Under the pieces are notes generated by a model. It was not told the DNA's origin. It made no database searches and saw only the letters and a list, made by a program, of their open reading frames with translations. A stretch of DNA of 64,000 bases, from positions 140,258 through 204,257 of the IMG/VR virus record IMGVR_UViG_3300044821_000131. One strand, given 5' to 3'. Position numbers and translations under genes: made by a program. Positions 20,602 to 61,104 of the stretch are shown piece after piece. Numbering within the stretch: the first letter of the stretch is position 1; each line of letters opens with the position of its first letter.

Positions 20602-20603
20602 CC

Positions 20604-21482: not shown

Positions 21483-22129
21483 GATACGCAATTCCAGGTT
21501 TTCAGACGCCGGATCATCCCAAGCATGACACTCGGGTATTCGCGAAGGCTGACGGCACGGTACATTTCATGTTCATGGATGATCGTCCGCTGGATGAAAA
21601 ATTGCCGCCGTTTTTGATTTTCATCAGCATCGAACATGGACGGGAAATTGAATTGCAGGCGTTCACACAATCCACACGTTTCGTATATCAAAGAAAACAC
21701 GAGGACCGAGCCAGCAAGTCTTACTGGTTTAAACTTCGCACTGATGAGTTGATAATTCTTCCGGGTACCTATCAAGTTCGGTTTGTAGTAAAAGGTGACG
21801 AGTGGGTGAAAAAGTCATTGACCGTACGCAATCACCCGGCGTTGCCTCGCAACCCAAAACCCGGAGTAGGTGTCGGCCATCGCATGGTGTTAAGTTTCGG
21901 TGACCCGAAAGTGGTGGTAGTTCAAGGTGACATGCGGCATCAAGCTGACAACCTGCCGAAGCCTAACAATTTTGCCTACAACATGGGTACTACCTATTTC
22001 GGTAGTCCGCCTCCGAATGACTATCAGACGGGCAGTGTGGGTGACGCCTATATTCAGATTATTGGAAATGAGTTTATAGCCGAGTGGATAAAGGTTTCAG
22101 GTTATGACACAAATACAGGCTGGGAGTAA
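21479..22129 (+). CDS. Hypothetical protein, fibre module
   Basis: ATGA coupling at 21479; C-terminal [19 protein letters not shown]...[13 protein letters not shown] resembles fibre shoulder motifs. Confidence 0.45.
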
Positions 22130-25100: not shown

Positions 25101-25578
25101 AGGCCCAACCGGGGCGAGTGGGGCTGCTTCCACCGTGGCTGGACCAACTGGACCTACAGGTCCGACAGGCGCGTCAGGAGCAGCGAGTACTGTAGCGGGT
25201 CCGACAGGTCCGACAGGCCCAACGGGCGCTTCTGGTGCTGCAAGTACGGTTGCCGGACCAACCGGCCCTACGGGACCAACAGGTGCTTCTGGTGCTGCTT
25301 CAACAGTTGCTGGCCCTACCGGTCCGACAGGCCCAACGGGCGCTTCTGGTGCTGCAAGTACCGTGGCTGGCCCTACCGGGCCGACAGGTGCGTCAGGAGC
25401 AGCGAGTACTGTGGCGGGTCCGACAGGCCCAACTGGGCCGACAGGTGCGTCAGGAGCAGCAAGTACTGTTGCTGGACCAACTGGTCCTACCGGACCTACC
25501 GGTGCAACAGGGCCGACCGGCCCCGGCGGCGGCGCATCTTCAAACTCAATGGCATATCCTTGGTTTTTAGACTTATGA
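22129..25578 (+). CDS. Collagen-like tail fibre 1 (interrupted GPT repeats plus three copies of an 82-aa domain)
   Basis: Repeating [19 protein letters not shown] units; three copies of [19 protein letters not shown]...ADWNINL. Confidence 0.85.
23437..24954 (+). repeat. Three 246-nt direct repeats (23437-23682, 24121-24366, 24709-24954) separated by 57-nt-unit collagen arrays
   Basis: Near-identical DNA and protein copies seen directly. Confidence 0.9.
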
Positions 25579-28500
25579 CAATCATACTCGACACAACCTC
25601 AAAATACATAGACGTGGTAATGACCGCACCGCCGGCCACGACCAACCCGTCGTTCTTCTCCAGCTACGCCGACAACAACGGCACGACTTTTACGGAAGGA
25701 GGCAACGATGGTGTGCTCAATGGAACTACGCTGGTAACACTGGTTGCCGCACCGGCATCGAGCACGCGCCGGACGGTAAAGAAGCTTGGAATTTATAATG
25801 CTGATACCGCGCCCGTCACAATTACAGTTGCAATAAATGACTCAGCCACTCGTCGTATTTTTGCCAAGGTTACGCTGCAACAAAATGAAACGTGGTTGGG
25901 TGATGTGCAGATGGACGCGAATGGAAACGTGAAGGGGATTGGACCTACTGGCCCTACTGGACCAACTGGTCCAACTGGACCAACTGGTCCTACAGGAGGC
26001 ACGGGTGCAGTTTCAACGGTCGCGGGTCCGACTGGTCCTACTGGTCCGACAGGTCCCACTGGTGCTGCTAGTACCGTGGCGGGACCTACTGGTCCAACTG
26101 GACCTACAGGTCCCACTGGTGCTGCTTCTACTGTTGCGGGTCCGACTGGTCCTACTGGTCCGACAGGCCCAACTGGAGCAGCAAGTACCGTAGCAGGTCC
26201 GACTGGTCCAACCGGACCTACTGGTGCAGCTAGTACCGTAGCCGGCCCAACTGGTCCGACGGGAGCCACTGGACCTACCGGGCCGACTGGATCAGCCGCA
26301 GTCGTAACTGTACAGGTCATTGCCACAGCGGGAAGTACGACCACGCTAACATCTGGAAGTCCTTATCAAACAGATTTTACGGGGACGCTTAATCAGACTT
26401 GTGTTTTACCGAATGCTACGACTTTATCAGTGGGGCAGCGTTACCAAGTAAACAACAATTCTACTGGACTGATTACAGTACAGGTAAATGGTGGAACATT
26501 CTTGGCAACCATAGCTACTGGAATGTCATGGCTAGTTACATTGTTGACCAATGGTACTACTGCTGGTACGTGGGATTTTGATTGGATAGGTAACGTCCAA
26601 GGACGCGGGACTCAAAGTATAGCCACTTCCGGTGGGAGCACACAATTGACAGCGACGAGTCATAGACAGCTTATCTTAACGGGTACGGCTACGCATACCA
26701 TAATACTTCCCGATTGTACTACGCTACCTTTCACGGATTGGTCTTTTGAAATAGACAATCAATCTCCGCTAACCATTGCTGTGCAGTATTTTGGAGGGGC
26801 GGCACTAACGCTTATTACGGGCTACGGGCAGTTAATTTTAAGCTGTAACTCTATCGCCACACAAGCAGGCACTTGGCAATATCAGACGGACCAGCAGATT
26901 TCGGCGGATATTCCGCCAACGCCACAGGTTCTCAACGGACTGGATGTTTGGGGGCATAGTTGGCTGGAGAATCCTTTAACGTCACCAACATTTTCAAGCT
27001 TGGGCACGAATAGTAACGAATTGTTTGGGCGCATATTTGCAACATCGTGTGGTATCCCAGCATCAAGATATATTCAGCACGCCCGTACAGGAGCCATGCT
27101 GGTGGGTGGAACTCGGGCCGCGACAACTGGCGGCGGTAATTTTGCAAAGATGTTGAACGAACTTGTACGTTCAAGGCAAACTCCGCCGTACGTTCGATCA
27201 GGAAATGCGCATCTTATTTGTTGGGGCATTAACGACATTGGGAATAACACGGCGGCGAATCAGGCCAATCTCAGAGTTAGCGCGCAGAACATCTTAACGG
27301 TGCTAATTTCCAAGGCACGTTCGGCAGCGATCTATAACGCCAACCCGACGGGAGCAAACCTTGCATTCGGTGCCAACTGGGTGGCCGCAACTGGTGCCAA
27401 CGATTTTACGTCGGGCTTCGCCCGTCAATGCACGGTGGTAGATTCCGCCGGATCGTCTACTATCACGTTTACAATCCCCATCGGCTATCAAGGCGAACCG
27501 ATTTGTTTCTGCTTGGGCACGCTTTCAGGCGGATCAATCGTGGTTACTTGGGGCGGTGGTGCTGGTATTACTGGCACCACAACCTTGAGCGGTATTGGTT
27601 TGGCAGCAAACGGCGTCATTCTCAAGAGGATCACAACTCTGACCAAGGCGAACGCCGGTCAAACCATAACCTGCGCGGTGACGACCATATCCGCTTCGAC
27701 GGCCTATTTTGACGGGGTATGGATTGAGGCGTTCAAGGCTGTGCCTATCTTAGTGTGTAACTGTCCTCGCCTGCCGGAGCATTTAATTACTTGGGCGAGC
27801 GGAGCAGGCGTCACTACGGGTGTCAACACCAGTTTTACCGACGCTAACGTGCAATTCTCAAACACGGGCGGTTGGTATGACGTAGGAGCCACCCTAAACG
27901 AAACCGATGCGCAAGGCGCGTTTACTGGAGCGACAAATACCATCTCATCCGTCACCAATGCAACCACGGTTGTACTGGGTACGAATGCGGCGGCGGCAAA
28001 AACAAATATCCAATACACAATCCAACGTCGAATTCGAGGTTACTCCTCAAGTCTATATTGGACAACGAATACCAATTTCACCAGCGCGACGAATCTTAGC
28101 CATGCGGCGGCGGATACGGACATCACGAATTGGAACTCGATGATAGCAACTGTCGTGGCTCAGTTCGACTCAATGGTTCAAGTTGTTGATCTGGATGCGG
28201 CTATTGGAGCAGACGCCACCGTGCCTTCAAACGTTTACACATGGTTCTCCATGGATGGAGGTCATCTCAACGCACTTGGGCACATGCGCTGCGCTCAAGC
28301 GGTTATGCTGGCTGCGATTAACTTGATTGCGCCAACAACCGATCCGCAACCATTCGCGAACCTTCAAGAGCAGTCTGTTCCGGTTTATGAGCCGGCAGAG
28401 TACCGGCGCGTGATTCGTACGGGCCAGATTTACCTGCCTGATGGAGCAATCCTTGGTCCGGTGGCAAATTTATACACAGCCGTTCTGGGAGATTGTTTTG

Positions 28501-29006
28501 CATTTCCGTTTTTTGTGACGGAAGCCGCAGAGTTTTGGACAACCGTGTTCATGGATCAGTCAAACGCTGGAACCTCGCAAATGCGTGTAGCGGTATATGA
28601 TGATGTGGGCGGTGGAAATGGGCCGCTGGGTTACCCTAGTTGCGTTCTCATCGACACAGGAGTCGTGGCCATGAACGGTTCGGCGTCGGTAACAAATATA
28701 GCCCCGGCTGGAATAGCTCGAACGATCTATCCGGGACTGAACTGGCTGGTAATCAAATGCGACGTGTTGGGTACAGCATCCACGTTTTACACCATGTTCG
28801 GCACTTCTCTACAATTACCGGGATGGAACGGAGCACACTTGGGCACATCCACAAACTTTCTTCAGCCCATAGCCTACAAGGTAACGGGCGTGGCCGCGGG
28901 TGCATTTCCGGGCGTGTTCCCGACTGGCGGATTACTTGTTGGTTGTAACGTGGGCGCAACTGGCCAGTTTGCTCCCGTTGTAGGCGTAACCCGGACTATT
29001 CAATAA
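25575..29006 (+). CDS. Collagen-like tail fibre 2 with SGNH/GDSL esterase domain
   Basis: ATGA coupling at 25575; short GPT collagen; two TLP-type repeats; SGNH blocks [17 protein letters not shown] and [11 protein letters not shown]. Confidence 0.75.
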
Positions 29007-29045: not shown

Positions 29046-29753
29046 ATGTCTACGACCAACGATCTTATTCGCACAAAAATGGGTTTTTATGTCCTGCAAA
29101 ACGATACACATTTATCGCGCTGGATCGAAAATTCAAATCAGTTGGTGATCCCTTACAACGTGGCGGAGATCGCCAGTTACGCGCACGTTATTCCTGAAGG
29201 TGGTGTGGTAATAAACGCTGGTGCCTGTCTGGGAGATCACACCGCGGCCTATGCCCATATCGTGGGCAGCCAAGGGCATGTATACGCTTTTGAGCCTCGT
29301 CCTGATACCTTTGCAGCCCTCGAAAAGAACATGAGCGTGTTCAAAAACGTACACGTGCTCAATTGTGCACTGTCCGATACCAACGGTACTGTAAATCTAG
29401 TGTTGGACCCTAACGTAGGCGCGTCTTACACTACGTCTGCGGAGGGTGACGTGAAAATAGAGCCAGCAAAGCTGGACGACTTGTTCCTGACTACATTTAC
29501 ACGTTGCGATTTTATCCACTTGGATGCCGAAGGCTATGAACCGAGGATACTCTTAGGAGCACAAGAGTTGATCCGGAAATTCCGACCGGCATTGGTCCTT
29601 GAACTGTGCGACCACCATCTCAAACGCGCGGGATCGTCCGAAACAGAGCTTCTAAGCTTACTGAAAAAATGGGGATACATTGTATTCCCGATTCCCGGTC
29701 AGGTGTGTCCTGAGCAACGCGACGTTTTGGCGCTTCCGAGGATGGCCCAATGA
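29046..29753 (+). CDS. FkbM family SAM-dependent methyltransferase
   Basis: VINAGACLGDHT, VYAFEPRP, NCALSD, FIHLDAEGYEPRILLGA, RPALVLEL. Confidence 0.9.
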   Translation: MSTTNDLIRTKMGFYVLQNDTHLSRWIENSNQLVIPYNVAEIASYAHVIPEGGVVINAGACLGDHTAAYAHIVGSQGHVYAFEPRPDTFAALEKNMSVFKNVHVLNCALSDTNGTVNLVLDPNVGASYTTSAEGDVKIEPAKLDDLFLTTFTRCDFIHLDAEGYEPRILLGAQELIRKFRPALVLELCDHHLKRAGSSETELLSLLKKWGYIVFPIPGQVCPEQRDVLALPRMAQ

Positions 29754-30850
29754 GACTGCACCTGCTGGCGCTTCCGAATGTTCAGACGACAAAAGCTTAT
29801 TCGTTGGATGGGTTCTGTGTCGCCACCATACGCTTTGCCAAGATGATGAAAGATATTGGTCACACGGTTATCCTCTACGCTTCGGAAGAAAATGAGGCAC
29901 CGTGTGATGAACTGGTTACTGTGATCACCAAGGCTGAACAGAAGGCGCTGAGTCGTGGAGAGTATCAATACGAGGCCATGAATGAGAACTACCCGCTGTG
30001 GTCCGTGGCAAACCCACGTATCATCGAAGCAATCAGGGAGCGTAAACAGCCGCGAGATTTGCTTCTCACAATCGGCGGTGCCTCCCAAAAGGTCATAGCC
30101 GATGCCCATCCCGACTTGCCCTGTGTTGAATATTCGATCGGATACATTGCAAGTTTCGCGCCTTACCGCATCTACGAGAGCTGCGCCTGGCAACACTGGT
30201 CACACGGACAGCAGCAGAATCAGTTCGGAAGATTCTTCGACGAAGTCATACCCTATTTTTTCGACGAGCAAGAATTTATACCCCGGGTGAACAAGGAGAA
30301 TTTCACACTGTATGTGGGTCGGCTGACTCAAAATAAAGGACTTACCATCGCCTGTCGCGCGGCGAAACTAGCCGGAGTGCCACTGAAGGTTATAGGGCAT
30401 GGAGATCCTGCCTTGGTGACGGATGGCGCCGAATATCTGGGAGTCTTGCCAGACGCGGAACGAAACGATTGGATGTCCCGAGCTTCGTCTGTATTGTGCC
30501 CTACTCTGTATTTAGAACCCTTCGGCGCGGTCGCAGTTGAGGCACAGCTTTCTGGAACTCCGGTAATAAGCACCAACTTTGGTGGCTTCACGGAGACTGT
30601 CGAGCATGGCAAGACCGGATTTCGTTGCGCCTATTTGGGGCAGTTCGCACAGGCTTTAAAAGAGGTGTACAGCTTGGATCCAAACTACATACGACAACGC
30701 GCGGTGGAAAAATATTCCATGCACCGATTGAAGTACTCCTACGAACGTTACTTCGACAAGCTGTCGATGCTCTGGGATAAGGGCTGGGATACCACTTCAG
30801 TCAACGTGTCAGATTTCGCACCGTCGCCGATCGGTAGCGCGCAACCGTAG
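29750..30850 (+). CDS. GT-B glycosyltransferase family 4
   Basis: LYVGRLTQNKG and LCPTLYLEPFGAVAVEAQLSGTPVISTNFGGFTETVEHGKTGF (E-x7-E motif). Confidence 0.92.
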   Translation: MRLHLLALPNVQTTKAYSLDGFCVATIRFAKMMKDIGHTVILYASEENEAPCDELVTVITKAEQKALSRGEYQYEAMNENYPLWSVANPRIIEAIRERKQPRDLLLTIGGASQKVIADAHPDLPCVEYSIGYIASFAPYRIYESCAWQHWSHGQQQNQFGRFFDEVIPYFFDEQEFIPRVNKENFTLYVGRLTQNKGLTIACRAAKLAGVPLKVIGHGDPALVTDGAEYLGVLPDAERNDWMSRASSVLCPTLYLEPFGAVAVEAQLSGTPVISTNFGGFTETVEHGKTGFRCAYLGQFAQALKEVYSLDPNYIRQRAVEKYSMHRLKYSYERYFDKLSMLWDKGWDTTSVNVSDFAPSPIGSAQP

Positions 30851-38119: not shown

Positions 38120-39955
38120 CTATCCTGAATACGCTCCCGGGAGATTGTAGTTGAAGTTTCCTCGTAACATCGACTCCAGCCGTAGCTTCATGCTGAGATC
38201 ACTGAACATCGGCTCGCCAATCATAATCTTGCCAAGCATGTAAGCGTAGTTGAGGGCCTGCAGCGTGTCGTTCGGACGACTGGCACTAGCGCGATAAATA
38301 AACGTGTTAGTGCCAGCGTTCCCCGCCTTCTCACCCGGCGCGCGATACATGTTGAGACAGTCCGTCAAATACTCCTCAGCGTACTCCCAAGAGAAACAGC
38401 GTATACGCTTCTGGCGTATAGCATCGAAGGTGAAAGACAATGATTCTGTTTTGTTGAGCGACCATTGATTATAGATGTGCGGTCCTTTTGGTTCAGATAT
38501 GAGGGCTGTAGCGGGACCGACGTAGTTAAAGATAAGATGTTTCTCCGGCTGAATAAATTCTCGCAATTTGCTATTGTAGACTGCGCCAACACCGAAATCT
38601 GAGGCCAAGGCAAATCCCATGTGCTGCTTCCATTCCCGTATGATGGTACCAATGATGTCGTCGTAGTTCATACCGGTAAAGCGACTCATATGCAGAATGT
38701 CAAAGAGTCCGTTTGAAGTGATACCAAGTACGACATGTACGGTCGTACTGATCTTAGTGTGAGACATAGGTTGGTAGTCACTGCCACCCCAGTCACAACC
38801 AGACACGATGTATTGATATTTTTTTGCTTGGGCGTTACGCTTGAGCAGCCCAACGTCCTTACCGAGCGTGCAGATGTCTTGTAGTTGTTGCCGAGTTATT
38901 TCACGCTCACCTTCTTCGGTTGGGACACCAAGAATTTCCTGCAGGAACTTTCGATAATCGCCTTTGTTCTTCCGCTCATAGATCTTGGACCAGCGATAAG
39001 GATTCTGGATAACGGACGGTACGATCAACTGAGGAATGTGAAAGCCATACTTCTTGGCTTCAAACGCCTGCATGTTGGAATGAAGAAATCTACCAGCGCG
39101 AACGTTCAGGAGCTTTCCACATTTGGCACAGCAAGGTCCCTCCGGTTGAATCATGTCCATCACGCCATGTTCCGGGAGTGGAATGTTCTCGTGACCGGAC
39201 GGGCAGGTCATGACCCATACGCCACCTGAAGACTCTCCGTACTTCTTCTCAAGAAACGTGTCGGTGGTGAGCGAGGTGCCGGCGTAAAAAGTGATCGGGT
39301 ATTCCGAGGCCGATTGTACCTGCTCGACTTCGATTTCCAGATCGGGATCGAAGTCCTGACTTTCATCGAATAAGATTTCATCGGAACTTTTGCCGCGTAC
39401 ATTAGACGCACTACTGAGCACGTAGGCGAGTTCGATCTTCGATCCGTTCGCAAATTCTTTCAAGTGAAGATTCTGTCGGAGTTTGTAGTCCGGCTTGTAG
39501 TCCAGCTGCGCGCGCACCATTTCTTGTAAACGGTTGGCATAGGTCTCAAGCTGTTGACTGCGAGGACTGATGTACAGACTGGAGAATCCTGGGAACAGGC
39601 GTGTCAATAGGAGTTGACGCGCGGCGAAACTTGTGGATTTACTGATCTGTCGAGACCCCCGCAACACGGTGAACCCGCCGAGATGAATATTAAAGATTTG
39701 AAACGAAAAACCGTAATCACTAAACAGGAGCGGACGGTCTTTCGGGTAGCGCGGCCAGTAAAAACCGGTTAAGAACACCATGTTGAAATTGCAGAATTTC
39801 AAGAAATCCATCAAGGCGTCATTGAACTCCCGGGCGCCGGCAGCACTTATTTTTGATCGTTCGTAGAGGCCGGACAGTTCATTGCTGCGCGTGACGAGCT
39901 GGTGCCGAAACTCACCATCAGTGCGAAGTTTATAATCGAGGTCGAGATAAGGCAT
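38120..39955 (-). CDS. terL: Terminase large subunit (GpA-like)
   Basis: VLRGSRQISKSTS Walker A variant, RGKSSDEILFDESQD Walker B, Cys clusters (CPSGH, CAKC), nuclease motif SGCDWGG. Confidence 0.85.
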   Translation of the reverse strand: MPYLDLDYKLRTDGEFRHQLVTRSNELSGLYERSKISAAGAREFNDALMDFLKFCNFNMVFLTGFYWPRYPKDRPLLFSDYGFSFQIFNIHLGGFTVLRGSRQISKSTSFAARQLLLTRLFPGFSSLYISPRSQQLETYANRLQEMVRAQLDYKPDYKLRQNLHLKEFANGSKIELAYVLSSASNVRGKSSDEILFDESQDFDPDLEIEVEQVQSASEYPITFYAGTSLTTDTFLEKKYGESSGGVWVMTCPSGHENIPLPEHGVMDMIQPEGPCCAKCGKLLNVRAGRFLHSNMQAFEAKKYGFHIPQLIVPSVIQNPYRWSKIYERKNKGDYRKFLQEILGVPTEEGEREITRQQLQDICTLGKDVGLLKRNAQAKKYQYIVSGCDWGGSDYQPMSHTKISTTVHVVLGITSNGLFDILHMSRFTGMNYDDIIGTIIREWKQHMGFALASDFGVGAVYNSKLREFIQPEKHLIFNYVGPATALISEPKGPHIYNQWSLNKTESLSFTFDAIRQKRIRCFSWEYAEEYLTDCLNMYRAPGEKAGNAGTNTFIYRASASRPNDTLQALNYAYMLGKIMIGEPMFSDLSMKLRLESMLRGNFNYNLPGAYSG

Positions 39956-52903: not shown

Positions 52904-53144
52904 AGACAACGCACGACTGCATCTACTGATTCTTACCGATACTGAAGTCTTGCTAAACTTGGCCAACGCCGCGCAAGCACAAGACCTTGCTGGACACGTC
53001 ATCGATCTTGGAAAAGATTCGGACACAGGAATAGAGTCGATCTTACTGGAGGTTAAGTCTTCGGGAACACCCAACGGTAAGACAGCCTATTTCCGCGAGG
53101 TAGCACAACACGCAGATCGTATTGTGCATGTAGACACGCTATGA
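52863..53144 (+). CDS. Hypothetical protein
   Basis: 93 aa ORF between the RAMP and helicase genes. Confidence 0.45.
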   Translation: MNKAPFKLIVSRTEDNARLHLLILTDTEVLLNLANAAQAQDLAGHVIDLGKDSDTGIESILLEVKSSGTPNGKTAYFREVAQHADRIVHVDTL

Positions 53145-54598
53145 TCCGAATTACTTGGTACTCCGGAGAACTTGTAGTCTCAGACTCAGACCGCGCACCT
53201 GACGACGCCTGTCCCATTGAGTCGAAGTTGTATTACACGCACAAGAGCTTGGTACAGAATGAAGAGAAGCCTTGGATCCGAGATGTGACCAAAGAGAAGG
53301 TGAGCTTGGTACGGCCGCTCATGGGACAGCCGTGTCGAACGTTTGTATGTTATCAAGGACTTCTGGATCGGGTGCTCGACGCCTGCAAGAAAAAGAGACT
53401 GGCCTACGAGTTGATCGACGCGCGGGATCCGATGCCGGCGCCGCAGGTCAAGAACATGAAGGGATTCAGGAACGGGCAGTTCACCGCGGTGATTAATTTT
53501 CTGTCACCGAACCGCTCTGGAATATTAAAATGTCCTACCCGCTGGGGAAAAACGGTTGCACTTGTTAACGTAATCCGAGCCTATCCAAATACCCCGACAA
53601 TATTGGCGGCGCCTGGTGTTGACCTGATGCGGCAGCTGGTCGACGAATTGAAGGCCGCGTTGCCCGGGAGAACCATCACGGGACTGTTCACTGGATCGAA
53701 AGACAAGAATCAGTCGCAGGACATAACCGTGTGCAGTCTGGACTCGTTGGAAAAAATAAACCCAGATCACGTGCGGCTGCTGCTGATAGACGAACCACAC
53801 GCGATCGCAACGCCCTCCCGAATGTTAAATGTGGCCAAATTTAAGCACGCGCGCATCTACGGGTTCGGTGCAACAGTTGAAGGTAGATTCGATGGTGCCG
53901 ATATAATAACGGAAGGTTTGGTTGGTCCGGTCTTGTACGAGAGAACATTTCAACAGGCTGTGGCCGATGGAGCTATCTGTCCACTTGTAGTATACATGTT
54001 GAAACTGGAGTTCCCGACGTTCGAGTGTCAGAGCCGTGATCATGCCTATCGCTACCTTGTGTACAAGAATAAAGATCTGTGTGCCATCGTTCAAGAGATA
54101 GTGGCTTCCAAGATACCTGAGGATTGGCAGACTCTAATATTTGCCGATCAACAGAAGCAGGTGGATCTGATCAATCAGTTCGTCGAGTCTGGCGTCGGAG
54201 CGGTGGCGTCGCGGATGAATACGAAGGAGCGACGGGAAATGTTTGCGGCGATGAAAGCTGGAACGATCAAGCGCTGTGTGTCCACTAGCATCTACGCACA
54301 AGGTGTAACATTTCCGGACCTGCGGGTGATCATCAATACGTCGGGCGGTGGAGGCTCTATTACGGGTACGCAGAAGCCTGGACGTCTGGCGCAGATACGG
54401 CCAGGTAAGAAAGCCGGATATCTGGTGGATTTCCTGCTGGAACCGAAGGACTGGCATTTACGCGAGAATCAGAATTACGGACCTTTGGACAAGTGGTCAT
54501 CGGTGGTGTTCGATTGTCGTAATCGAATGAAAGTATATCAAGAAAACGGCTACGATGTACGCATTGTACGTTCGGTAGATGAAATCAATTTTGAATAA
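53141..54598 (+). CDS. Superfamily 2 helicase (UvsW/RadD-like)
   Basis: CPTRWGKT Walker A, LLIDEPH Walker B, GATVEG motif III, TSIYAQGVTFPDL motif V, QKPGRL motif VI. Confidence 0.9.
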   Translation: MIRITWYSGELVVSDSDRAPDDACPIESKLYYTHKSLVQNEEKPWIRDVTKEKVSLVRPLMGQPCRTFVCYQGLLDRVLDACKKKRLAYELIDARDPMPAPQVKNMKGFRNGQFTAVINFLSPNRSGILKCPTRWGKTVALVNVIRAYPNTPTILAAPGVDLMRQLVDELKAALPGRTITGLFTGSKDKNQSQDITVCSLDSLEKINPDHVRLLLIDEPHAIATPSRMLNVAKFKHARIYGFGATVEGRFDGADIITEGLVGPVLYERTFQQAVADGAICPLVVYMLKLEFPTFECQSRDHAYRYLVYKNKDLCAIVQEIVASKIPEDWQTLIFADQQKQVDLINQFVESGVGAVASRMNTKERREMFAAMKAGTIKRCVSTSIYAQGVTFPDLRVIINTSGGGGSITGTQKPGRLAQIRPGKKAGYLVDFLLEPKDWHLRENQNYGPLDKWSSVVFDCRNRMKVYQENGYDVRIVRSVDEINFE

Positions 54599-54600
54599 TT

Positions 54601-55077
54601 ATGGGCGATAGATTTTCGACGACTTTGGAAATAGGTGGTAAGTTGGAACGGTCGAAGTTGCATGAGTTGGTAGAAGCACTACGGTCCGATACTTACGGCC
54701 TTGACTGGGGTGATCCGGGCGCTGAGACCGAGTTCAGGGAATACATAGAACACGCATCTGAGAATACAGGCATTTTAAGTTTTCACTGCAGTGAATTGTC
54801 TCTTAGCAGTACGGCTACAACTGATTTTTGTGAAGAGAACAGACTGTCATATGTTACTTACCAAGAAGGAAAGCACGAATATGATGGCGATATAAGTTGG
54901 TGGCGTCCGGGAATGAAAATACCAAGAATTCACATGGCAGATCATGCAGGATCGAGGCCGGTTTTGGGTTTAAGTGAGCTGAAAAACTATAAGACCCGAG
55001 GTCTGACCTTGGCTGGTGTTATTAAAAACCTGCGGGCTGTTCCGCCCAAATTGCCGGTGTTTAAATTAATCCAATGA
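54601..55077 (+). CDS. Hypothetical protein
   Basis: 158 aa ORF. Confidence 0.55.
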   Translation: MGDRFSTTLEIGGKLERSKLHELVEALRSDTYGLDWGDPGAETEFREYIEHASENTGILSFHCSELSLSSTATTDFCEENRLSYVTYQEGKHEYDGDISWWRPGMKIPRIHMADHAGSRPVLGLSELKNYKTRGLTLAGVIKNLRAVPPKLPVFKLIQ

Positions 55078-55436
55078 CCACATTGTCTATAAAGGAACTT
55101 AGGCCCGACAGCATTCCGGAAGGAATGAAAGCGGTGGCCGATATCGCTACGCGGCACCTGACTGAAACTGACGGTAATCTCTTACGATGGAGTAAAACTA
55201 GCGCAAGAATTATAGGCTATGTGGGACCTACAGAATACGGATGGATGCTGGAGACAGCGCAGTACGATGAGGCTATGATGGACGCAGACTTGGGTCTCGC
55301 GGAAGACATCAAACGCAGCGGCATGTCAAAAACGTTTGTGGCCATAATGTCGGCTTTGTACAGACAGAACATCTACTATGTGTGCTTCGATACCGACGGG
55401 TACGAACTCGCCGAGTTTCCTATATTCGACTGGTAA
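55074..55436 (+). CDS. DUF5983-like hypothetical protein
   Basis: IATRHLT...TEYGW...VCFDTDG...FPIFDW pattern. Confidence 0.5.
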   Translation: MTTLSIKELRPDSIPEGMKAVADIATRHLTETDGNLLRWSKTSARIIGYVGPTEYGWMLETAQYDEAMMDADLGLAEDIKRSGMSKTFVAIMSALYRQNIYYVCFDTDGYELAEFPIFDW

Positions 55437-56752: not shown

Positions 56753-57328
56753 ATGGACCCAGATATTCAGAACATCGCGTCCGAGATAAAAAAATACTTC
56801 TACGACTTCAAACGGCAACAAATAGGAAAAGCCTATTCCCCGTCCGAACGTATGCGTCGACCAGCCATCTGGGCCGCCGCAGCAGAGCTCTGCGTAGAGT
56901 TGAAGGCCGATCCGTTTGCCTTCGTCAAAGCCGCCTTCATGTTTAATAACGTTCCCGGTGGTCCGTACCCGACACAGATCACCGGGCGTGCTGCCGATAA
57001 ATGGTATCGTCAGTACGTGCAGCTGAACGACGCAAAAGGTCTGACGCTGCTGGAGGTAACGGAGAAGGAGGTCAAGAACGTCATGTCGCACGCGTTGCAG
57101 GTCGTCGCCAGTCAAAGTCGGCGTTCATGGAAAGATTTGTTGATGGACGCCTATGAAGTACGGCAGGATATTGTGCCGGCCTACGCCAGAATTTTCATGT
57201 TTCCGACTGATAAGGATATTTTAAACCAGTGGGGCAAATTGGCCACTGAAGAGTTAAACAGCAATCCCAAGCTGATCGAATGCGTTCAGCGTCTGGGATA
57301 CAATACGGATTTTACTAATGGCTACTGA
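56753..57328 (+). CDS. Hypothetical protein
   Basis: 191 aa ORF. Confidence 0.55.
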   Translation: MDPDIQNIASEIKKYFYDFKRQQIGKAYSPSERMRRPAIWAAAAELCVELKADPFAFVKAAFMFNNVPGGPYPTQITGRAADKWYRQYVQLNDAKGLTLLEVTEKEVKNVMSHALQVVASQSRRSWKDLLMDAYEVRQDIVPAYARIFMFPTDKDILNQWGKLATEELNSNPKLIECVQRLGYNTDFTNGY

Positions 57329-57695
57329 AGAGTGTAATGTCCAACTGGACAAGCAGTATATCAATACCGCCGCAGTGCGCAGAAAATTGTTGTTGTTATC
57401 GAAAGAGAAACGTGCCGGCAAATTCAAGCGGGTAAGCGAACAGACGCTGCAGAACGTCAACACGGAAGTTCGTTTAATCGTCGAGCGGATACTTAGAGAA
57501 TACAAACCCGAACACTACAAGACCCAATTGATCAACCGATCAGTAATCAAGGCTTTGTTGGAGGAACGCGCCACGGACAATAGCGTTCCGAAGTTCAAGG
57601 TCACACCGGGAATGTTGGTTAACATTGACAAGCAGCTTCACACATATCTCGACGGTGTAGTTCATCGTCAACCCAGTGTTGGAAAAACGTTATGA
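57318..57695 (+). CDS. Tandem (doublet) histone-fold-like protein
   Basis: Two ~56-aa internal repeats: INTAAVRRKL..RVS..long helix..PEHYKT and INRSVIKAL..KVT..long helix..PSVGKT; basic composition. Confidence 0.6.
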   Translation: MATEECNVQLDKQYINTAAVRRKLLLLSKEKRAGKFKRVSEQTLQNVNTEVRLIVERILREYKPEHYKTQLINRSVIKALLEERATDNSVPKFKVTPGMLVNIDKQLHTYLDGVVHRQPSVGKTL

Positions 57696-58042
57696 GCGAA
57701 AACAAACCGTTGGTTTATCTGGCTGTACCTTATTCCCATCCCGATCCGAGTGTCAGGCAATGGCGTTTCGAACGTGTAAATTTGGCGGCGGCGAAATTGA
57801 TGCGCCAAGGCCTGAATATATTTTCACCCATCAGCCATACACATCCGATATCTGAGGCTGGGGATCTGCCGAAAGGTTGGGAATTCTGGGAGGCGTTTGA
57901 TCGGGCATATCTTACCTGTTGCAACAAATTGATCGTGCTCAAACTGGCCGGATGGCAAGAGAGCGTCGGAGTGACCAGCGAAATCGACATTGCCCGGGAG
58001 CTTGGCATCCCGGTGGAGTTTATCGAAGATGAACAAGGATGA
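57692..58042 (+). CDS. DUF1937 / nucleoside 2-deoxyribosyltransferase-like protein
   Basis: VYLAVPYSHPD, FSPISHTHPI, W..SVGVTSEIDIARELGIPV. Confidence 0.8.
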   Translation: MSENKPLVYLAVPYSHPDPSVRQWRFERVNLAAAKLMRQGLNIFSPISHTHPISEAGDLPKGWEFWEAFDRAYLTCCNKLIVLKLAGWQESVGVTSEIDIARELGIPVEFIEDEQG

Positions 58043-58223: not shown

Positions 58224-58662
58224 TGCAAAATTAAAAGAGCGAACGCCCTTGTCTTGGAAAGCCGTTCGTAGAGGTGATATTTATTGTGCGCCTGCCTGCG
58301 GTCGCGGATGCACTTGGAAGGAATACACCAGAGCCACAATCGAAGCCAAGGCCATAATTACCGCGATGAAGACTAAGGGGTGGCGTGCCGAAGTTACTGA
58401 GAACCTCGGATGGTATTGGTGCTTAACTAACGACTTTTGTGGCATATCGCTTCATGTACACGAACACTACGGGGTGCCTAAATATTGGTGTCTGATGGCG
58501 GGTGGAGACGTGACAAATGCCACAAGCGGCAGTTATGATTTCCATTCAGACAAAAGCTTTCGGGATCCGAATCGAGCTGTGGCGCATCAGATCAAAATAG
58601 CCACAAGGTTTTTCGAATCGCACGATCGAGCGCGTAAAAACATGTTGTCGATCTTGCCATGA
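58216..58662 (+). CDS. Hypothetical protein
   Basis: YCAPACGRGC; 148 aa. Confidence 0.55.
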   Translation: MTDAKLKERTPLSWKAVRRGDIYCAPACGRGCTWKEYTRATIEAKAIITAMKTKGWRAEVTENLGWYWCLTNDFCGISLHVHEHYGVPKYWCLMAGGDVTNATSGSYDFHSDKSFRDPNRAVAHQIKIATRFFESHDRARKNMLSILP

Positions 58663-59393
58663 GCCGGCTGAGCGTCTTGGTGGCCTGTGAAGAGAGCGGA
58701 ACGGTGCGGGACGCATTTATCGCCCGCGGCCACAATGCTTGGTCCTGTGACTTAAAGCCGTCACTGACGCCAGGACCACATCTGAAAAGTGACGTGGTGC
58801 GCTGGCTAACAGGACAGCCTAGACTTGTTTCAACACTGAAGCCAGTGCCATGGGACCTGCTTATCTGCCACCCTCCGTGCACGTATCTGTGCGGATCGGG
58901 CATGCATTGGACCACCCGCGGTCTGAGAGATCCAAAATTGACGTCCGACGCTATCGAGTTTGCTGAGACTTTGTGGAATTGCGGCATCGAAAAAATATGT
59001 CTGGAGAATCCGGTAGGCGTCCTCAGCACCCGGAGCAATCTGGGTAAGCCGTCCCAGATCATTCAACCTTACGAGTTCGGCGAAGATGCCAGCAAAAAGA
59101 CATGCCTGTGGCTGAAGAATCTTCCGATCTTGGAGTCAACCGAATATTTTGAGCCGAGGATGGTCTGCAAAGCTTGCGGTGGTCATAATGGCTATGCTGC
59201 GGCCTCCCGAGACGGATGTAGACATTGCGGAGCAGAAGCTGCGTTTTTAAGACCCAGGTGGTCCAATCAGACTGACAGCGGACAGAATAAACTTGGACCT
59301 TCGGCCAATCGAGCGGCAGCTCGAGCGCAGACCTATCGGGGAATAGCAAGAGCTATGGCGGAGCAGTGGTCGGAAGATTTAAAGAAAGTGTAG
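58659..59393 (+). CDS. Phage DNA cytosine-5 methyltransferase-like protein
   Basis: VLVACEESGTVRDAF, SCDL, DLLICHPPCTYL (catalytic PC), LENPVG, KKTCLWL. Confidence 0.75.
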   Translation: MSRLSVLVACEESGTVRDAFIARGHNAWSCDLKPSLTPGPHLKSDVVRWLTGQPRLVSTLKPVPWDLLICHPPCTYLCGSGMHWTTRGLRDPKLTSDAIEFAETLWNCGIEKICLENPVGVLSTRSNLGKPSQIIQPYEFGEDASKKTCLWLKNLPILESTEYFEPRMVCKACGGHNGYAAASRDGCRHCGAEAAFLRPRWSNQTDSGQNKLGPSANRAAARAQTYRGIARAMAEQWSEDLKKV

Positions 59394-59583: not shown

Positions 59584-61104
59584 ATGGGTAGTATTACACA
59601 AGACTTTAGACGGGCACCGTTGCCTCCAGATGCGTCCGAAGTACGAAAAGACCACACCGGTATAGAGCGGGAAATCTTCTTCGGCGCCGTAGCCTCCTAC
59701 AATTTTTACAAACTTGTCCGCAATAACGTTTGCCCATACGACGCAGAAAAAAGGACATGCCGACCCGATTTTAGCATCGAGCGCTATAACATCGCGTGGG
59801 CCTTCATTGTCGCGTACTGGCAACGTTTTGAGAATATAACACTTCAGCGCGATCTAAGCATTCCCACCGAGACGCTGTGTGCCTTCGTTATTGATTGTGC
59901 CAACCGTTCCGGCTTGGTCGTGGACGTAGCCAAACAGATCACCGACGAAATCGTCGAAGAAGTCGGCTACACGGCAAATCTTACCTACGAGTCCCTGAAA
60001 GCTCTGGCCGAGAGCTCCGCGTTCAACGAGTGGCTGGAGTCCAGGCTATTGTCGCAGGTTACGGGCACCATTGCGGCGCAGAAGAACTTGGGCTATCTGA
60101 CCATGGACACGTTGGAGGAAGCCGTGGCGAAGGCCCGGAGGGCCATTACACCGGTAAAGAATGACTATTTCGTCAACGGAGCCAACTTCCTCTTCGGTAA
60201 ACGGAAAATACGTCCCAGCGTTCCCATAACGGCATTCCCAAATCTGTCCCGCGCGCTGGGCGGCGGCCTGTTCTGGGGAGAAGCCACAATGGTAGCCGGA
60301 ATCAATGCCGGAGGAAAAACGATAGTTACCATGCAGCTTGCTCGAGACTTTGCCTATCAAAGTATTAATACTGTGGTATTTACTACAGAGCGTAAACCGG
60401 AGGAATTGTTTGTTCGTTCTGTGAGTGAGTTATTGAATGTGGATATAGGCCGTCTCATGACGGTTCCGGCAACGGTGAATCAGGAAGTGGAGATAAATTA
60501 CATTCCAGATTGGGTGTGGTCCCACCCGGGAGATGCTGCGCGCTTGGAGCGAATGTACGATGTCTACAGTCAGCATTTACTGTTCATTGATTGGAGTAAG
60601 GGTCAAGGCGCTACCATAAGCGAGAGTTTTGAACAGGTTATGCAGCAGATAGAACAAACCGGATGGATGCCACAAATAGTGATATTCGACTGGATAGGTG
60701 GAGGATTAGACGTTATCGAGAATAAGGACTGGCTTCGGATGTATTACCAGTCGGCCGCAGACTGCCTGATCAATCATAGCAAACGCACGAACCGACATGT
60801 GATCATGACGGCACAATTGAACAAGGAGAAGGTCAAGCCTAGTACTAACTTTGTGGATATGAGCATGTTATCGGAATGTTTGACGATGACTAACAACTTG
60901 ACCAATTTTATTGGTATTACGGCTAAGCGGGATCAGAATCTGAAACCGGGGGCTGCGACGGTGCAGAAGTTTCAGAATCTGTGTGCGGCCAAAGCGACGC
61001 ACGGGCCAGGTGGCATCATACCGGTGGAGGCACAGTTCAATGTACAAAGGTTTATGGAACGTAACGATGCGGCTGAGAAGATGTTGAAGACTGGGGGTGG
61101 TTAA
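59584..61104 (+). CDS. DnaB-like replicative helicase
   Basis: GEATMVAGINAGGKT Walker A, VVFTTE, VIFDWIG Walker B, MTAQLNK. Confidence 0.88.
   Translation: MGSITQDFRRAPLPPDASEVRKDHTGIEREIFFGAVASYNFYKLVRNNVCPYDAEKRTCRPDFSIERYNIAWAFIVAYWQRFENITLQRDLSIPTETLCAFVIDCANRSGLVVDVAKQITDEIVEEVGYTANLTYESLKALAESSAFNEWLESRLLSQVTGTIAAQKNLGYLTMDTLEEAVAKARRAITPVKNDYFVNGANFLFGKRKIRPSVPITAFPNLSRALGGGLFWGEATMVAGINAGGKTIVTMQLARDFAYQSINTVVFTTERKPEELFVRSVSELLNVDIGRLMTVPATVNQEVEINYIPDWVWSHPGDAARLERMYDVYSQHLLFIDWSKGQGATISESFEQVMQQIEQTGWMPQIVIFDWIGGGLDVIENKDWLRMYYQSAADCLINHSKRTNRHVIMTAQLNKEKVKPSTNFVDMSMLSECLTMTNNLTNFIGITAKRDQNLKPGAATVQKFQNLCAAKATHGPGGIIPVEAQFNVQRFMERNDAAEKMLKTGGG

What the first reader, a model, noticed from the sequence alone, without database searches (positions are those of the whole stretch)
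57318..57695. Phage-encoded histone doublet (two histone folds in one chain)
Seen: an internal duplication with a 55-57 aa offset. I15NTAAVRRKL aligns with I72NRSVIKAL, R38VS with K94VT, and P64xxxKT with P119xxxKT, with a ~22-aa helix between the RVS-like and KT loops. Established: prokaryotic histones (HMf, Bdellovibrio Bd0055-type) have alpha1 - RVS-like L1 - long alpha2 - xKT L2, and fused doublets exist (HMk, giant-virus histones). Inference: this is a single-chain pseudo-dimeric histone lacking alpha3 that could coat or compact phage DNA, shield it from host nucleases, or silence host DNA.
Basis: partly seen in the sequence, partly recalled or inferred. Interest (0 to 1): 0.75.

Follow-up and report, generated by a model that had tools for sequence, protein, structure and literature searches.

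The report
Fused minimal histone-fold protein in phage
A 125-residue basic protein in the replication gene block of a large uncultured phage is a tandem fusion of two copies of a ~57-residue unit that most resembles the smallest prokaryotic histones. The unit belongs to a widespread phage family absent from Pfam, NCBIfam and PHROGs.

Summary
ORF 57318-57695 (+) encodes 125 aa made of two homologous ~57-aa units. A profile of 14 doublets aligns half 1 to half 2 at E 2e-10. A profile of free-standing ~60-aa singlets hits the ORF twice, at E 1e-12 and 5e-11.

The histone reading is supported in silico but not proven:
- Each half of an AlphaFold model (pLDDT 84) has histone-fold chains as its best matches among 48,161 PDB chains: TAF4, HTkC, HLp, HBb.
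- The singlet profile's only PDB sequence hit is HTkC, an alpha3-truncated histone (E 0.001).
- The ESM Atlas model of this exact protein superposes over both halves on archaeal double-histone clusters (TM 0.61).
- Covariation in 211 singlets points to an antiparallel alpha2-alpha2' dimer with L1 next to L2'.

It fails formal membership tests. There is no alpha3, no RxTxxxxD motif and no Pfam hit. The AlphaFold model gave no doublet-wide match.

The genes sit beside helicases, PolB, clamp-like and ligase-like genes, not virion genes. The most likely function is a replication-associated, non-specific dsDNA-binding protein. I rate it a new variant of a known kind. DNA binding is untested.

The parts
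57318..57695 (+). Whole ORF, 125 aa plus stop. Basic protein (net charge +9, pI 9.85). It is a two-unit fusion of the 'KFTRVS...HPSVGKTL' family.
   Evidence: Relatives of 35-46% identity over the full length appear. The start overlaps the stop of the upstream gene by 11 nt, and its stop overlaps the next start (ATGA), which suggests translational coupling.
57351..57524 (+). Unit 1 (residues 12-69): alpha1 17-31, loop L1 32-40 (K-F-K-R-V-S), alpha2 41-60, and a short turn or helix 64-68 followed by K68-T69. The family's L1 motif is kept. The C-terminal HPSVGKTL motif has degenerated to P-E-H-Y-K-T.
57525..57692 (+). Unit 2 (residues 70-125): alpha1' 74-87, degenerate L1' (K-F-K-V-T), alpha2' 97-117, and an intact C-terminal motif Q-P-S-V-G-K-T-L that ends the protein. 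There is no alpha3.
57420..57437 (+). L1 of unit 1 (K35-F-K-R-V-S40). It is predicted to lie next to L2 of unit 2 and to form the one conserved L1-L2 site.
   Evidence: F36 and V39 are invariant and R38 nearly invariant in doublets. L1-L2 couplings 30-55, 27-60 and 34-60 are seen in singlets.
57672..57692 (+). L2 of unit 2 (P119-S-V-G-K-T-L125). This is the family signature and the counterpart of the histone L2 'R-K-T-I', with K-T kept.
   Evidence: G122 and T124 are invariant in all alignments.
56753..57328 (+). Upstream 191-aa gene of unknown function. It is a conserved neighbour of the doublet in this phage lineage.
   Evidence: It is 59% identical to the 189-aa gene directly upstream of doublet P0004 in L001. 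A 191-aa gene lies two genes upstream of the doublet in L026, with a 175-aa gene between them. The neighbour census groups these 189- to 191-aa genes at -1 or -2 in 2 family groups. No Pfam or PHROG hit.
53141..54598 (+). Superfamily-2 helicase (ResIII/Helicase_C). Part of the gene block that is syntenic with the doublet loci L001 and L026.
55074..55436 (+). DUF5983 protein. Part of the same syntenic block.
57692..58042 (+). Downstream gene, DUF1937 / nucleoside 2-deoxyribosyltransferase-like. Its start overlaps the doublet's stop codon.
58659..59393 (+). DNA methyltransferase (phrog_757).
59584..61104 (+). DnaB-like replicative helicase. In the related locus L026 its homologue starts 3 nt after the doublet.

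Best explanation
The gene encodes a single-chain pseudo-dimer of a minimal, alpha3-less histone-fold unit (alpha1 - L1 'KF(T/K)RVS' - alpha2 - L2 'PSVGKTL').

The free-standing ~60-aa unit is an obligate antiparallel homodimer. In that dimer the long alpha2 helices cross around position 43, and L1 of one chain packs against L2 of the other, as in the histone handshake. Tandem duplication fused the two chains.

After fusion, the loop pair next to the linker (L2 of unit 1 and L1 of unit 2) decayed. The distal pair (L1 of unit 1 and L2 of unit 2) and the basic alpha1 helices stayed conserved.

The protein is strongly basic and is co-transcribed with helicase and DNA-modification genes. It most likely binds double-stranded DNA without sequence specificity, through the alpha1-alpha1 surface and the one intact L1-L2 site. 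It would act during genome replication or early infection by bending, coating or organising DNA for the replication machinery.

What is shown by computation: the duplication, the existence of the family, the fold resemblance, the covariation and the gene neighbourhood. What is inferred: the handshake geometry in the doublet. What is inferred and untested: DNA binding and the replication role.
For: Duplication
- establish the two units.

Family
- Only 6 relatives are found by exhaustive phmmer.
- A profile of seven relatives, mostly doublets, finds 93 proteins. A singlet profile finds 827 at E<=1. Most are 57-71 aa, and none carries a Pfam domain or a name.
- The ESM Atlas has viral (Uroviricota) clusters of 707, 73 and 65 members.

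Fold of each half
- The AlphaFold model has pLDDT 83.8.
- Foldseek's top 50 PDB hits are almost all histone-fold chains.
- A search of 48,161 PDB chains made without Foldseek gives TAF4 (Z 5.8, rmsd 1.7 A over 49 residues), HTkC (Z 5.2), HLp (Z 4.8, 21% identity) and HBb (Z 4.6). 16 of the top 18 rows are histone-fold entries.

Sequence link
- The singlet profile searched against all PDB sequences has one hit below E 0.9: HTkC (9f2c), E 0.0011, aligned over L1 and alpha2.
- The only Pfam family hit by more than one member is the CENP-T histone fold (3 of 45 members).

Whole-chain geometry
- The ESM Atlas model of this exact sequence matches a 150-aa archaeal PF00808 cluster (TM 0.61, 103 residues, positions 12-125).
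- It also matches a 118-aa PF00808/DUF1931 cluster (TM 0.61/0.64, 96 residues). Most unrelated rows score 0.33-0.41; one unnamed archaeal cluster reaches TM 0.57 by query.

Covariation (211 singlets, Neff 79)
- The top non-artefact pairs are 15-34 (the alpha1-alpha2 hairpin) and 37-49. Both 37 and 49 lie inside alpha2, 12 residues apart.
- All 18 sequences with K/R at position 49 lack K/R at 37, although 80% of the family has it. This arose in at least 6 independent changes, and 5 of the 18 sequences are full charge swaps.
- Pairs 30-55 and 37-49 lie on the anti-diagonal i+j ~86; 34-60 (sum 94) also links the L1 end to the C-terminal tail.

Recurrent fusion
- The two doublet clades probably fused independently. 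The halves of clade 2 resemble each other more than they resemble either half of clade 1.
- Both clades lost the same loop pair.

Charge
- Net charge is +9 and pI 9.85. The mean pI of singlets is 10.9.

Context
- The window gene lies between helicases, beside a DNA methyltransferase, and upstream of a DnaB-like helicase.
- Relatives lie directly after PolB, between a ligase-like and a beta-clamp-like gene, directly before DnaB, or directly after ThyX.
Against: - There is no hit to any histone model in Pfam at its threshold, and nothing in NCBIfam or PHROGs.
- All structural scores are weak in absolute terms: Foldseek E > 2 and Z <= 5.8. Each PDB match covers only one half.
- The AlphaFold model gave no doublet-wide match to HMk, DUF1931, SOS or Marseillevirus doublets in PDB, AFDB, BFVD or the Atlas. 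Its pTM is only 0.54, and it shows no L1-L2 beta-bridge.
- The ESM Atlas model that does match doublets is of moderate confidence (pTM 0.48, pLDDT 0.70).
- The histone signature RxTxxxxD is absent. The family has G-K-T-L and then the end of the chain.
- In the window's own clade the positions equivalent to 37 and 49 are uncharged (N/V, N/I). The salt-bridge evidence therefore comes from relatives.
- Covariation rests on Neff ~79, and the F27/F34-L60 swap is confined to one clade.
- DNA binding has no direct evidence.
Confidence: 0.6

Rival explanations
1. The fold is histone-like, but its main job is protein-protein assembly. It would be a small accessory subunit of the phage replisome, bound to the polymerase, helicase or clamp. 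This resembles how the histone-fold pair Dpb3-Dpb4 serves DNA polymerase epsilon, or how TAFs and CENP-S/X use the fold. Any DNA contact would be secondary.
For: Family genes sit immediately next to PolB (5 of 39 sequence groups), a beta-clamp-like gene (6 groups), an ATP-ligase-like gene (6 groups) or DnaB (the doublet clade). Starts and stops often overlap. The best single structural match is TAF4, a non-chromatin histone fold that also lacks alpha3 in the crystal. One of the two L1-L2 DNA sites has decayed in the doublets.
Against: The proteins are very basic (pI ~10-11). They keep K/R at the positions where histones touch DNA: the V-K-K in alpha1, the R of R-V-S and the K-T of L2. The neighbouring gene differs between lineages (PolB, clamp, DnaB, ThyX, AAA_5/VWA, integrase), which argues against one fixed protein partner.
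Confidence: 0.2
2. It is not a histone relative at all. It would be a repeated basic helical hairpin that resembles half a histone fold by convergence. Its role would be something else, such as a small transcription regulator, an anti-defence protein or an RNA-binding protein.
For: All fold scores lie in the range where common helical arrangements occur by chance (tool notes). There is no Pfam membership. The AlphaFold whole-chain model did not match double histone folds. alpha3 and RxTxxxxD are missing.
Against: The best sequence hit in the PDB (HTkC) is also among the best hits of two independent structure searches. Every Pfam-bearing neighbour found by language-model features belongs to the histone-fold clan. 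The ESM Atlas model matches doublets over 96-103 residues. The i+j ~86 covariation fits a handshake and not a monomeric hairpin.
Confidence: 0.13
3. It is a virion-packaged genome-condensing histone. It would be loaded into the capsid with the DNA, as Marseillevirus doublets are.
For: The phage is large (204-kb contig). Viral histone doublets that compact DNA in capsids exist (PMC13088155).
Against: The gene lies in the helicase, methylase and DnaB block. In the window the terminase is at 38120-39955, and the tail and baseplate-like genes are at 16990-25578. Relatives are never next to structural genes in the loci examined.
Confidence: 0.05

Closest known systems
alpha3-truncated prokaryotic histones: face-to-face histone HTkC (PDB 9F2C), and bacterial histones HBb/Bd0055 (8FVX, 8CMP, 9EZZ) and HLp (9QT0)
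   Same: About 60 aa, basic, with an alpha1-L1-alpha2-L2 layout. R-V-S sits in L1 and K-T in L2, with lysines on alpha1. They superpose at rmsd 2.2-2.6 A over 48-51 residues. HTkC is the only PDB sequence hit of the singlet profile (E 0.0011).
   Different: There is no alpha3, not even the 3-4 residues that define this group. There is no RxTxxxxD: the R is replaced by G and the chain ends 1-2 residues after T. alpha1 is longer (14-15 residues) and alpha2 shorter (20-21). The family has its own invariant H-P-S-V-G-K-T-L tail. It is not detected by PF00808 and is found so far only in viral or mobile-element contexts.
Double histone folds: HMk of Methanopyrus, Aq_328/DUF1931, the Sos1 N-terminus, Marseillevirus and nudivirus doublets (reviewed in PMC13088155)
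   Same: Two homologous histone-like units lie in one chain. The ESM Atlas model matches archaeal PF00808/DUF1931 doublet clusters at TM 0.61-0.64 over both units.
   Different: It is much smaller (125 aa) and lacks both alpha3 helices. The linker is the decayed L2 of unit 1, and one L1-L2 site has degenerated. It is encoded by a tailed phage, whereas the 2026 review lists viral doublets only in a nudivirus and Nucleocytoviricota. The AlphaFold model did not match solved doublets.
Phage histone-fold proteins already reported: 'phage histones' (Schwab 2024, PMC11390915) and VTTHFP/VHHHFP/BBVHFP clusters (Liu 2025, PMC13681535)
   Same: They are small alpha3-type histone-fold proteins encoded by Caudoviricetes. 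VHHHFPs are described as an alpha3 fold followed by a 7-residue flexible tail, which is reminiscent of the singlets here.
   Different: The Schwab 'phage histones' and the VTTHFPs carry a long C-terminal tetramerisation helix, which is absent here. The spacing of their conserved residues (K19, G26, R39, K58) does not fit this family. The family motifs are absent from the Schwab supplements. Liu's sequences could not be checked. Neither paper, in the sections read here, describes a fused doublet of a prokaryote-type unit.
Functional analogues: phi29 p6, SPO1 TF1 (HU family), and Dpb3-Dpb4 of DNA polymerase epsilon (from general knowledge, not tested here)
   Same: They are small basic dsDNA-binding proteins encoded with, or acting with, the replication machinery.
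   Different: phi29 p6 and TF1 have unrelated folds. Dpb3/4 are full three-helix histone folds that form a heterodimer.

Membership tests
Histone-fold superfamily | alpha1 - L1 - long alpha2 - L2 - alpha3 (three helices) | tested here: not met
   alpha1-L1-alpha2-L2 is present twice. alpha3 is absent in unit 2, where the chain ends at L125, and is reduced to a 5-residue turn (64-68) in unit 1.
Histone-fold superfamily | Antiparallel 'handshake' pairing of two units: the alpha2 helices cross, and L1 of one unit lies next to L2 of the other | tested here: inconclusive
   For: covariation 37-49 and 30-55 on the anti-diagonal i+j ~86, plus the 34-60 L1-tail coupling. For: the ESM Atlas model matches double histone folds at TM 0.61 over both units. 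For: the same loop pair was lost in two doublet clades. Against: the AlphaFold model has pTM 0.54 and no doublet-wide match. Model coordinates could not be inspected.
Histone-fold superfamily | Recognition by curated sequence models (PF00808, PF00125 and relatives) | tested here: not met
   There is no Pfam hit for the doublet. Among 45 singlets there are only sub-threshold CENP-T_C hits (3 members, best E 0.0024). The profile hits HTkC in the PDB at E 0.0011.
alpha3-truncated histones (Schwab et al. 2024) | alpha3 shortened to 3-4 residues and alpha2 4-5 residues shorter than in nucleosomal histones | tested here: inconclusive
   alpha2 is 20-21 residues, which is shorter still. alpha3 is missing altogether in unit 2 and in the singlets, which end 1-2 residues after K-T.
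alpha3-truncated histones (face-to-face and bacterial dimer types) | RxTxxxxD (RKTxxxxD) motif that structures L2 | tested here: not met
   The family consensus is H-P-S-V-G-K-T-L followed by the end of the chain. Only K-T is kept; there is no R and no D. The definition comes from PMC11390915.
alpha3-truncated histones | Conserved basic residues on alpha1 for DNA contact | tested here: met
   V-K-K (V11, K12, K13 of the singlet consensus) is nearly invariant. The window protein has R21-R22-K23 in unit 1 and K78 in unit 2.
Double histone fold | Two homologous histone-fold units in one polypeptide | tested here: met
   hhalign E 2.3e-10 between the halves, and two HMMER domains. This holds on the condition that the unit is accepted as a histone fold.
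Double histone fold | The two units pair with each other within the chain | tested here: inconclusive
   The ESM Atlas model supports it. The AlphaFold model does not show it. The 8-13-residue linker is long enough by simple geometry, which is an inference.
'Phage histones' / VTTHFP | alpha3 histone fold plus a long C-terminal tetramerisation helix | tested here: not met
   There is no sequence after the L2 motif in the doublet or in typical singlets.
VHHHFP (Liu et al. 2025) | alpha3 fold with a 7-residue flexible C-terminal loop; conserved K8, K9, K47, R48 | not testable with these tools
   The description is compatible with the singlets. No sequences or supplements are held for that paper.
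Any histone | Binds and organises DNA | not testable with these tools
   The evidence is indirect only: pI ~10-11 and the replication gene context.

The most novel reading that the evidence does not exclude
The family is a previously unrecognised, widespread class of minimal two-helix histones. Phages and other mobile elements would deploy it as a dedicated DNA-handling accessory of their replication machinery, next to PolB, a clamp, a ligase or DnaB. It has been fused into single-chain doublets at least twice. If so, it would be the smallest natural histone fold. It would also be a prokaryotic-virus counterpart of histone-fold polymerase subunits such as Dpb3/4, and a natural experiment on how obligate histone dimers become doublets.
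Probability: 0.25. Interest if true: 0.75.

Novelty: new variant of a known kind. Interest (0 to 1): 0.6.

Why it matters
Histones in bacteria and their viruses have been recognised only since about 2023. Phage histone-fold proteins were first catalogued in 2024-2025, and none has a known function.

This family has hundreds to thousands of members in viral metagenomes, yet Pfam, NCBIfam and PHROGs do not detect it, and it is absent from about 50,700 deposited phage genomes. It therefore shows how much small DNA-architectural biology is still hidden.

If the handshake and DNA binding are confirmed, three things follow:
- It would define the lower size limit of the histone fold, with no alpha3.
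- It would add tailed phages to the short list of lineages with double histone folds.
- Its constant placement beside polymerases, clamps, ligases and helicases offers a concrete, testable role for phage histones in replication rather than in packaging.

The singlet and doublet pairs, and the asymmetric decay of one DNA-binding site, also make a tractable system for studying dimer-to-doublet evolution and for protein design.

Tried and rejected
- Direct sequence annotation led nowhere. Pfam, PHROGs and NCBIfam gave nothing significant for the doublet or the singlets. phmmer against PDB sequences gave nothing, and neither did the doublet profile.
- tblastn against 50,697 deposited phage genomes found nothing with the doublet or with two singlets. 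The word-indexed protein search with the single sequence found only itself.
- The single-sequence AlphaFold model was too poor to use (pLDDT 53).
- Foldseek against AFDB clusters, Swiss-Prot models, BFVD and the Atlas with the AlphaFold model gave no significant or doublet-wide match. The two AFDB hits with probability 0.99 are 63-68-aa proteins that look like family singlets. One is auto-named 'Integrase', which I regard as a naming artefact.
- Walker-A NTPase reading of 'G-K-T': rejected. The upstream glycine of GxxxxGK[ST] is missing, and the motif is the last 4-5 residues of a 60-aa protein.
- Up-down four-helix bundle: judged unlikely. A compact bundle should give many matches of Z above 6 over both halves, and none was found among 48,161 chains. 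It would also place L1 of unit 1 and L2 of unit 2 at opposite ends, contrary to their joint conservation.
- Covariation run with doublet halves mixed in gave block artefacts from the missing motifs, so I redid it on singlets only. Couplings that involve position 22 lie in an indel-prone loop and were disregarded.
- An attempt to fetch HTkC relatives for a profile-profile comparison failed because the only tool-given fragment was too short.
- The promoter and terminator scan around the gene was at chance level.
Full report
**1. The observation**

ORF 57318-57695 on the + strand encodes 125 residues.

On this sequence alone the internal repeat is weakly significant. Residues 1-69 against 70-125 score 35, compared with 22 +/- 4 for shuffles, p ~0.01.

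Relatives settle the question:
- An exhaustive phmmer scan of 1.84 billion representative proteins found six relatives.
- A profile of those relatives found 93 proteins, and a singlet profile found 827 at E<=1.
- About twenty are 108-128-aa two-unit proteins (14 of them full doublets). The rest are mostly free-standing proteins of 57-71 aa.
- The singlet consensus is roughly L-I-N-R-S-A-V-K-K-x-A-L-x-L-S-x-x-x-R-A-G-K-F-T-R-V-S-x-x-F-L-x-R-x-x-A-x-x-x-x-x-I-R-x-E-V-x-R-H-P-S-V-G-K-T-L.
- The half-1 and half-2 profiles of 14 doublets align at E 2.3e-10.
- The singlet profile aligns end to end with each half at about 1e-23. It also hits the window ORF as two domains.

The duplication is real, and the unit exists on its own.

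**2. Anatomy**

AlphaFold2 with the 14-doublet alignment gives pLDDT 83.8 and pTM 0.54. It places helices at 17-31, 41-60, 64-68, 74-87 and 97-117. That is alpha1-L1-alpha2 twice, and the chain ends right after the second L2 motif.

The two units are not equivalent. Unit 1 keeps the family's L1 motif (K-F-K-R-V-S) but has lost the C-terminal H-P-S-V-G-K-T-L, which is now P-E-H-Y-K-T and serves as the linker. Unit 2 keeps P-S-V-G-K-T-L but has a degenerate L1.

A second doublet clade (P0005-P0015) shows the same asymmetry. The halves of that clade resemble each other (mean score 64) more than they resemble either half of the window's clade (56 and 26). The two clades therefore probably fused independently.

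Other members carry a partial duplication, alpha1-L1-alpha2-insert-L1'-alpha2'-L2.

The protein is basic, with net charge +9 and pI 9.85. Singlets average pI 10.9.

**3. Is the unit a histone fold?**

No curated model recognises it. Four independent lines nevertheless point the same way.

(a) *Structure of each half.* Foldseek against the PDB gives no significant E-value, but almost all of the top 50 hits are histone-fold chains. The best TM-scores by target are for HTkC (0.68) and HBb (0.60-0.62). A search of 48,161 PDB chains that does not depend on Foldseek ranks these first:
- TAF4: Z 5.8, rmsd 1.7 A over 49 residues
- HTkC: Z 5.2
- TAF4 in TFIID: Z 4.9
- HLp: Z 4.8, 21% identity
- a yeast TFIID chain
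- HBb: Z 4.6

16 of the top 18 rows are histone-fold entries. The Z values are low, and the tool warns that such values can be chance. The enrichment is what counts.

(b) *Sequence.* The singlet profile searched against 177,635 PDB sequences has one hit below E 0.9. It is HTkC, at E 0.0011, aligned from the R-V-S of L1 through alpha2. HTkC is a face-to-face, alpha3-truncated histone that wraps DNA around a tetramer (bioRxiv 10.64898/2025.12.06.692711). The lone sequence hit is also a top structural hit, and that coincidence is unlikely by chance.

(c) *Language-model and ESM Atlas evidence.* The Atlas holds this exact protein. Its own model (pTM 0.48, pLDDT 0.70) superposes over both units on two archaeal clusters:
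- a 150-aa PF00808 cluster: TM 0.61, 103 residues aligned, positions 12-125
- a 118-aa PF00808/DUF1931 cluster: TM 0.61/0.64, 96 residues aligned

Most unrelated rows score 0.33-0.41; one unnamed archaeal cluster reaches TM 0.57 by query. Every Pfam-bearing neighbour found by features belongs to the histone-fold clan. A singlet representative matches a 62-aa PF00808 cluster at TM 0.65.

(d) *Covariation.* In 211 distinct singlets (Neff 79) the strongest couplings outside an indel-prone loop are 15-34 and 37-49.
- Pair 15-34 (z 6.5) is alpha1 packing on the start of alpha2.
- Positions 37 and 49 (z 4.7) both lie inside alpha2, 12 residues apart, and cannot touch within one helix.
- The usual pair is R/K at 37 with E at 49.
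- All 18 sequences with K/R at 49 lack K/R at 37, although 80% of the family has it. This arose in at least six independent changes, and 5 of the 18 sequences are full charge swaps.
- Weaker couplings 30-55 (the V of R-V-S with the S of P-S-V) and 34-60 behave the same way. A clade-specific size swap changes F27/F34/L60 to I-or-M/A/F.
- Pairs 30-55 and 37-49 fall on the anti-diagonal i+j ~86, and 34-60 again links the L1 end to the C-terminal tail.

This is the pattern expected if two chains pair antiparallel, with a two-fold axis through the middle of alpha2 (position ~43) and with L1 next to L2'. That is the histone handshake.

The same logic explains the doublets. The loop pair next to the linker decays together, and the distal pair is kept together, in two independent fusions.

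**4. What argues against**

- alpha3 is absent.
- The RxTxxxxD motif is reduced to K-T. That motif defines nucleosomal, face-to-face and bacterial-dimer histones (PMC11390915).
- The AlphaFold model gave no match spanning both halves to HMk, DUF1931, Sos1 or Marseillevirus doublets in any library, and it shows no L1-L2 bridge. The two predictors therefore disagree on how the halves pack. I could not inspect coordinates or PAE.
- The window's own clade has uncharged residues at the 37/49-equivalent positions.

I treat 'histone-fold-derived antiparallel pseudo-dimer' as likely (about 0.7) but unproven. I do not file the protein as a member of any named histone family.

**5. Context and likely function**

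The window is from a tailed phage on a 204-kb contig. It carries these genes:
- tail-fibre and baseplate-like genes at 16990-25578
- a terminase at 38120-39955
- an NAD ligase
- SbcCD
- two helicases
- a DNA methyltransferase

The target gene overlaps its upstream neighbour by 11 nt, and its stop overlaps the next start. No promoter or terminator signal above chance lies nearby.

The block helicase - DUF5983 - 191-aa protein - doublet is syntenic in two other contigs. In one of them a DnaB-like helicase starts 3 nt after the doublet.

The second doublet clade follows ThyX and lies near an ATP ligase.

Singlets lie directly after family-B DNA polymerases in two lineages. They also lie between a WGR/ATP-ligase-like gene and a beta-clamp-like gene.

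I made a census of 110 loci falling into 39 sequence groups:
- the ligase-like gene is at -1 in six groups
- the clamp-like gene is at +1 in six groups
- PolB is within three genes in five groups

Other contexts include AAA_5/VWA pairs, an integrase and DUF932. Structural genes were never adjacent.

The best-supported function is therefore a non-specific dsDNA-binding architectural protein that works with replication or early DNA transactions. A protein-protein role within the replisome is the main rival. A capsid-packaging role is unlikely.

**6. Comparison and novelty**

The nearest solved relatives are the alpha3-truncated histones HTkC, HBb and HLp. The nearest architecture is the double histone fold.

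Phage histone-fold singlets have been reported (PMC11390915; PMC13681535). Those described in detail differ from this family: they carry a C-terminal tetramerisation helix, and their conserved residues are spaced differently. The VHHHFP cluster could overlap with the singlets here, but I could not check that.

A 2026 review of double histone folds lists viral examples only in a nudivirus and Nucleocytoviricota, and it never mentions bacteriophages.

The family is absent from Pfam, NCBIfam, PHROGs and 50,697 deposited phage genomes. I rate it a new variant of a known kind.

**7. Verdict**

The structural claim is likely, and the functional claims are untested and probably need to shift towards replication.
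- Interest is 0.6.

Noticed in passing
L005 6916-9721; L006 6916-9721; L007 2-2444; also L047 and L055: A conserved three-gene set: a WGR plus ATP-dependent-ligase-like gene, then the ~57-aa singlet (with overlapping start), then a 466-572-aa beta-clamp-like gene. It occurs in 6 of 39 sequence groups. PD-(D/E)XK nuclease, RadC and DUF932 genes lie nearby, on contigs up to 0.6-1.46 Mb that look like bacterial chromosomes carrying a mobile element.
   Followed up: partly
L001 4193-5380 (- strand): In the phage contig syntenic with the window, an IS605 OrfB/TnpB gene (HTH_OrfB_IS605, OrfB_IS605, Cas12f1-like_TNB) is inserted just upstream of the 189-aa gene and doublet pair. It is absent at the same place in the window.
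   Followed up: no
L020 2673-4879 (same contig as L106): In a 197-kb viral contig, an adenylosuccinate-synthetase-like gene and an ATP-grasp gene lie directly upstream of a singlet. Phage homologues of this enzyme can be PurZ, which makes 2-aminoadenine DNA. This was not examined.
   Followed up: no
window 57692-58042 and 58659-59393: Directly downstream of the doublet are a DUF1937 / nucleoside 2-deoxyribosyltransferase-like gene and a DNA methyltransferase (phrog_757). The doublet may therefore act on modified phage DNA.
   Followed up: partly
proteins P0030, P0047, P0055, P0075, P0029, P0042, P0032, P0036: A third architecture in the family: alpha1-L1-alpha2, then a 20-40-residue insert, then a second L1-like turn, alpha2 and the P-S-V-G-K-T-L tail, with no second alpha1. 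Some members have long N-terminal extensions. Where position 49 of the second unit is K/R, position 37 of the first unit is not basic, in line with the covariation rule.
   Followed up: partly
window 29046-30850: An FkbM-type methyltransferase and a GT4 glycosyltransferase sit side by side in the phage, between the tail genes and an 846-aa gene of unknown function on the minus strand.
   Followed up: no
window 22129-25578 and 24924-29006: A 1149-aa tail-fibre protein with collagen-like repeats is followed by a 1360-aa ORF. The mechanically called TTG start of that ORF overlaps the fibre gene by about 650 nt in another frame, so the true start is probably later.
   Followed up: no
L001 9721-11694: A 657-aa protein with a Hom_end_hint (intein / homing-endonuclease) domain lies a few genes downstream of the doublet in the related phage.
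   Followed up: no
window 57318-57692 (models m96810e0bf556 and the ESM Atlas record): AlphaFold2 with a 14-sequence alignment and the ESM Atlas model appear to pack the two halves differently. Only the Atlas model matches double histone folds over the whole chain.
   Followed up: partly
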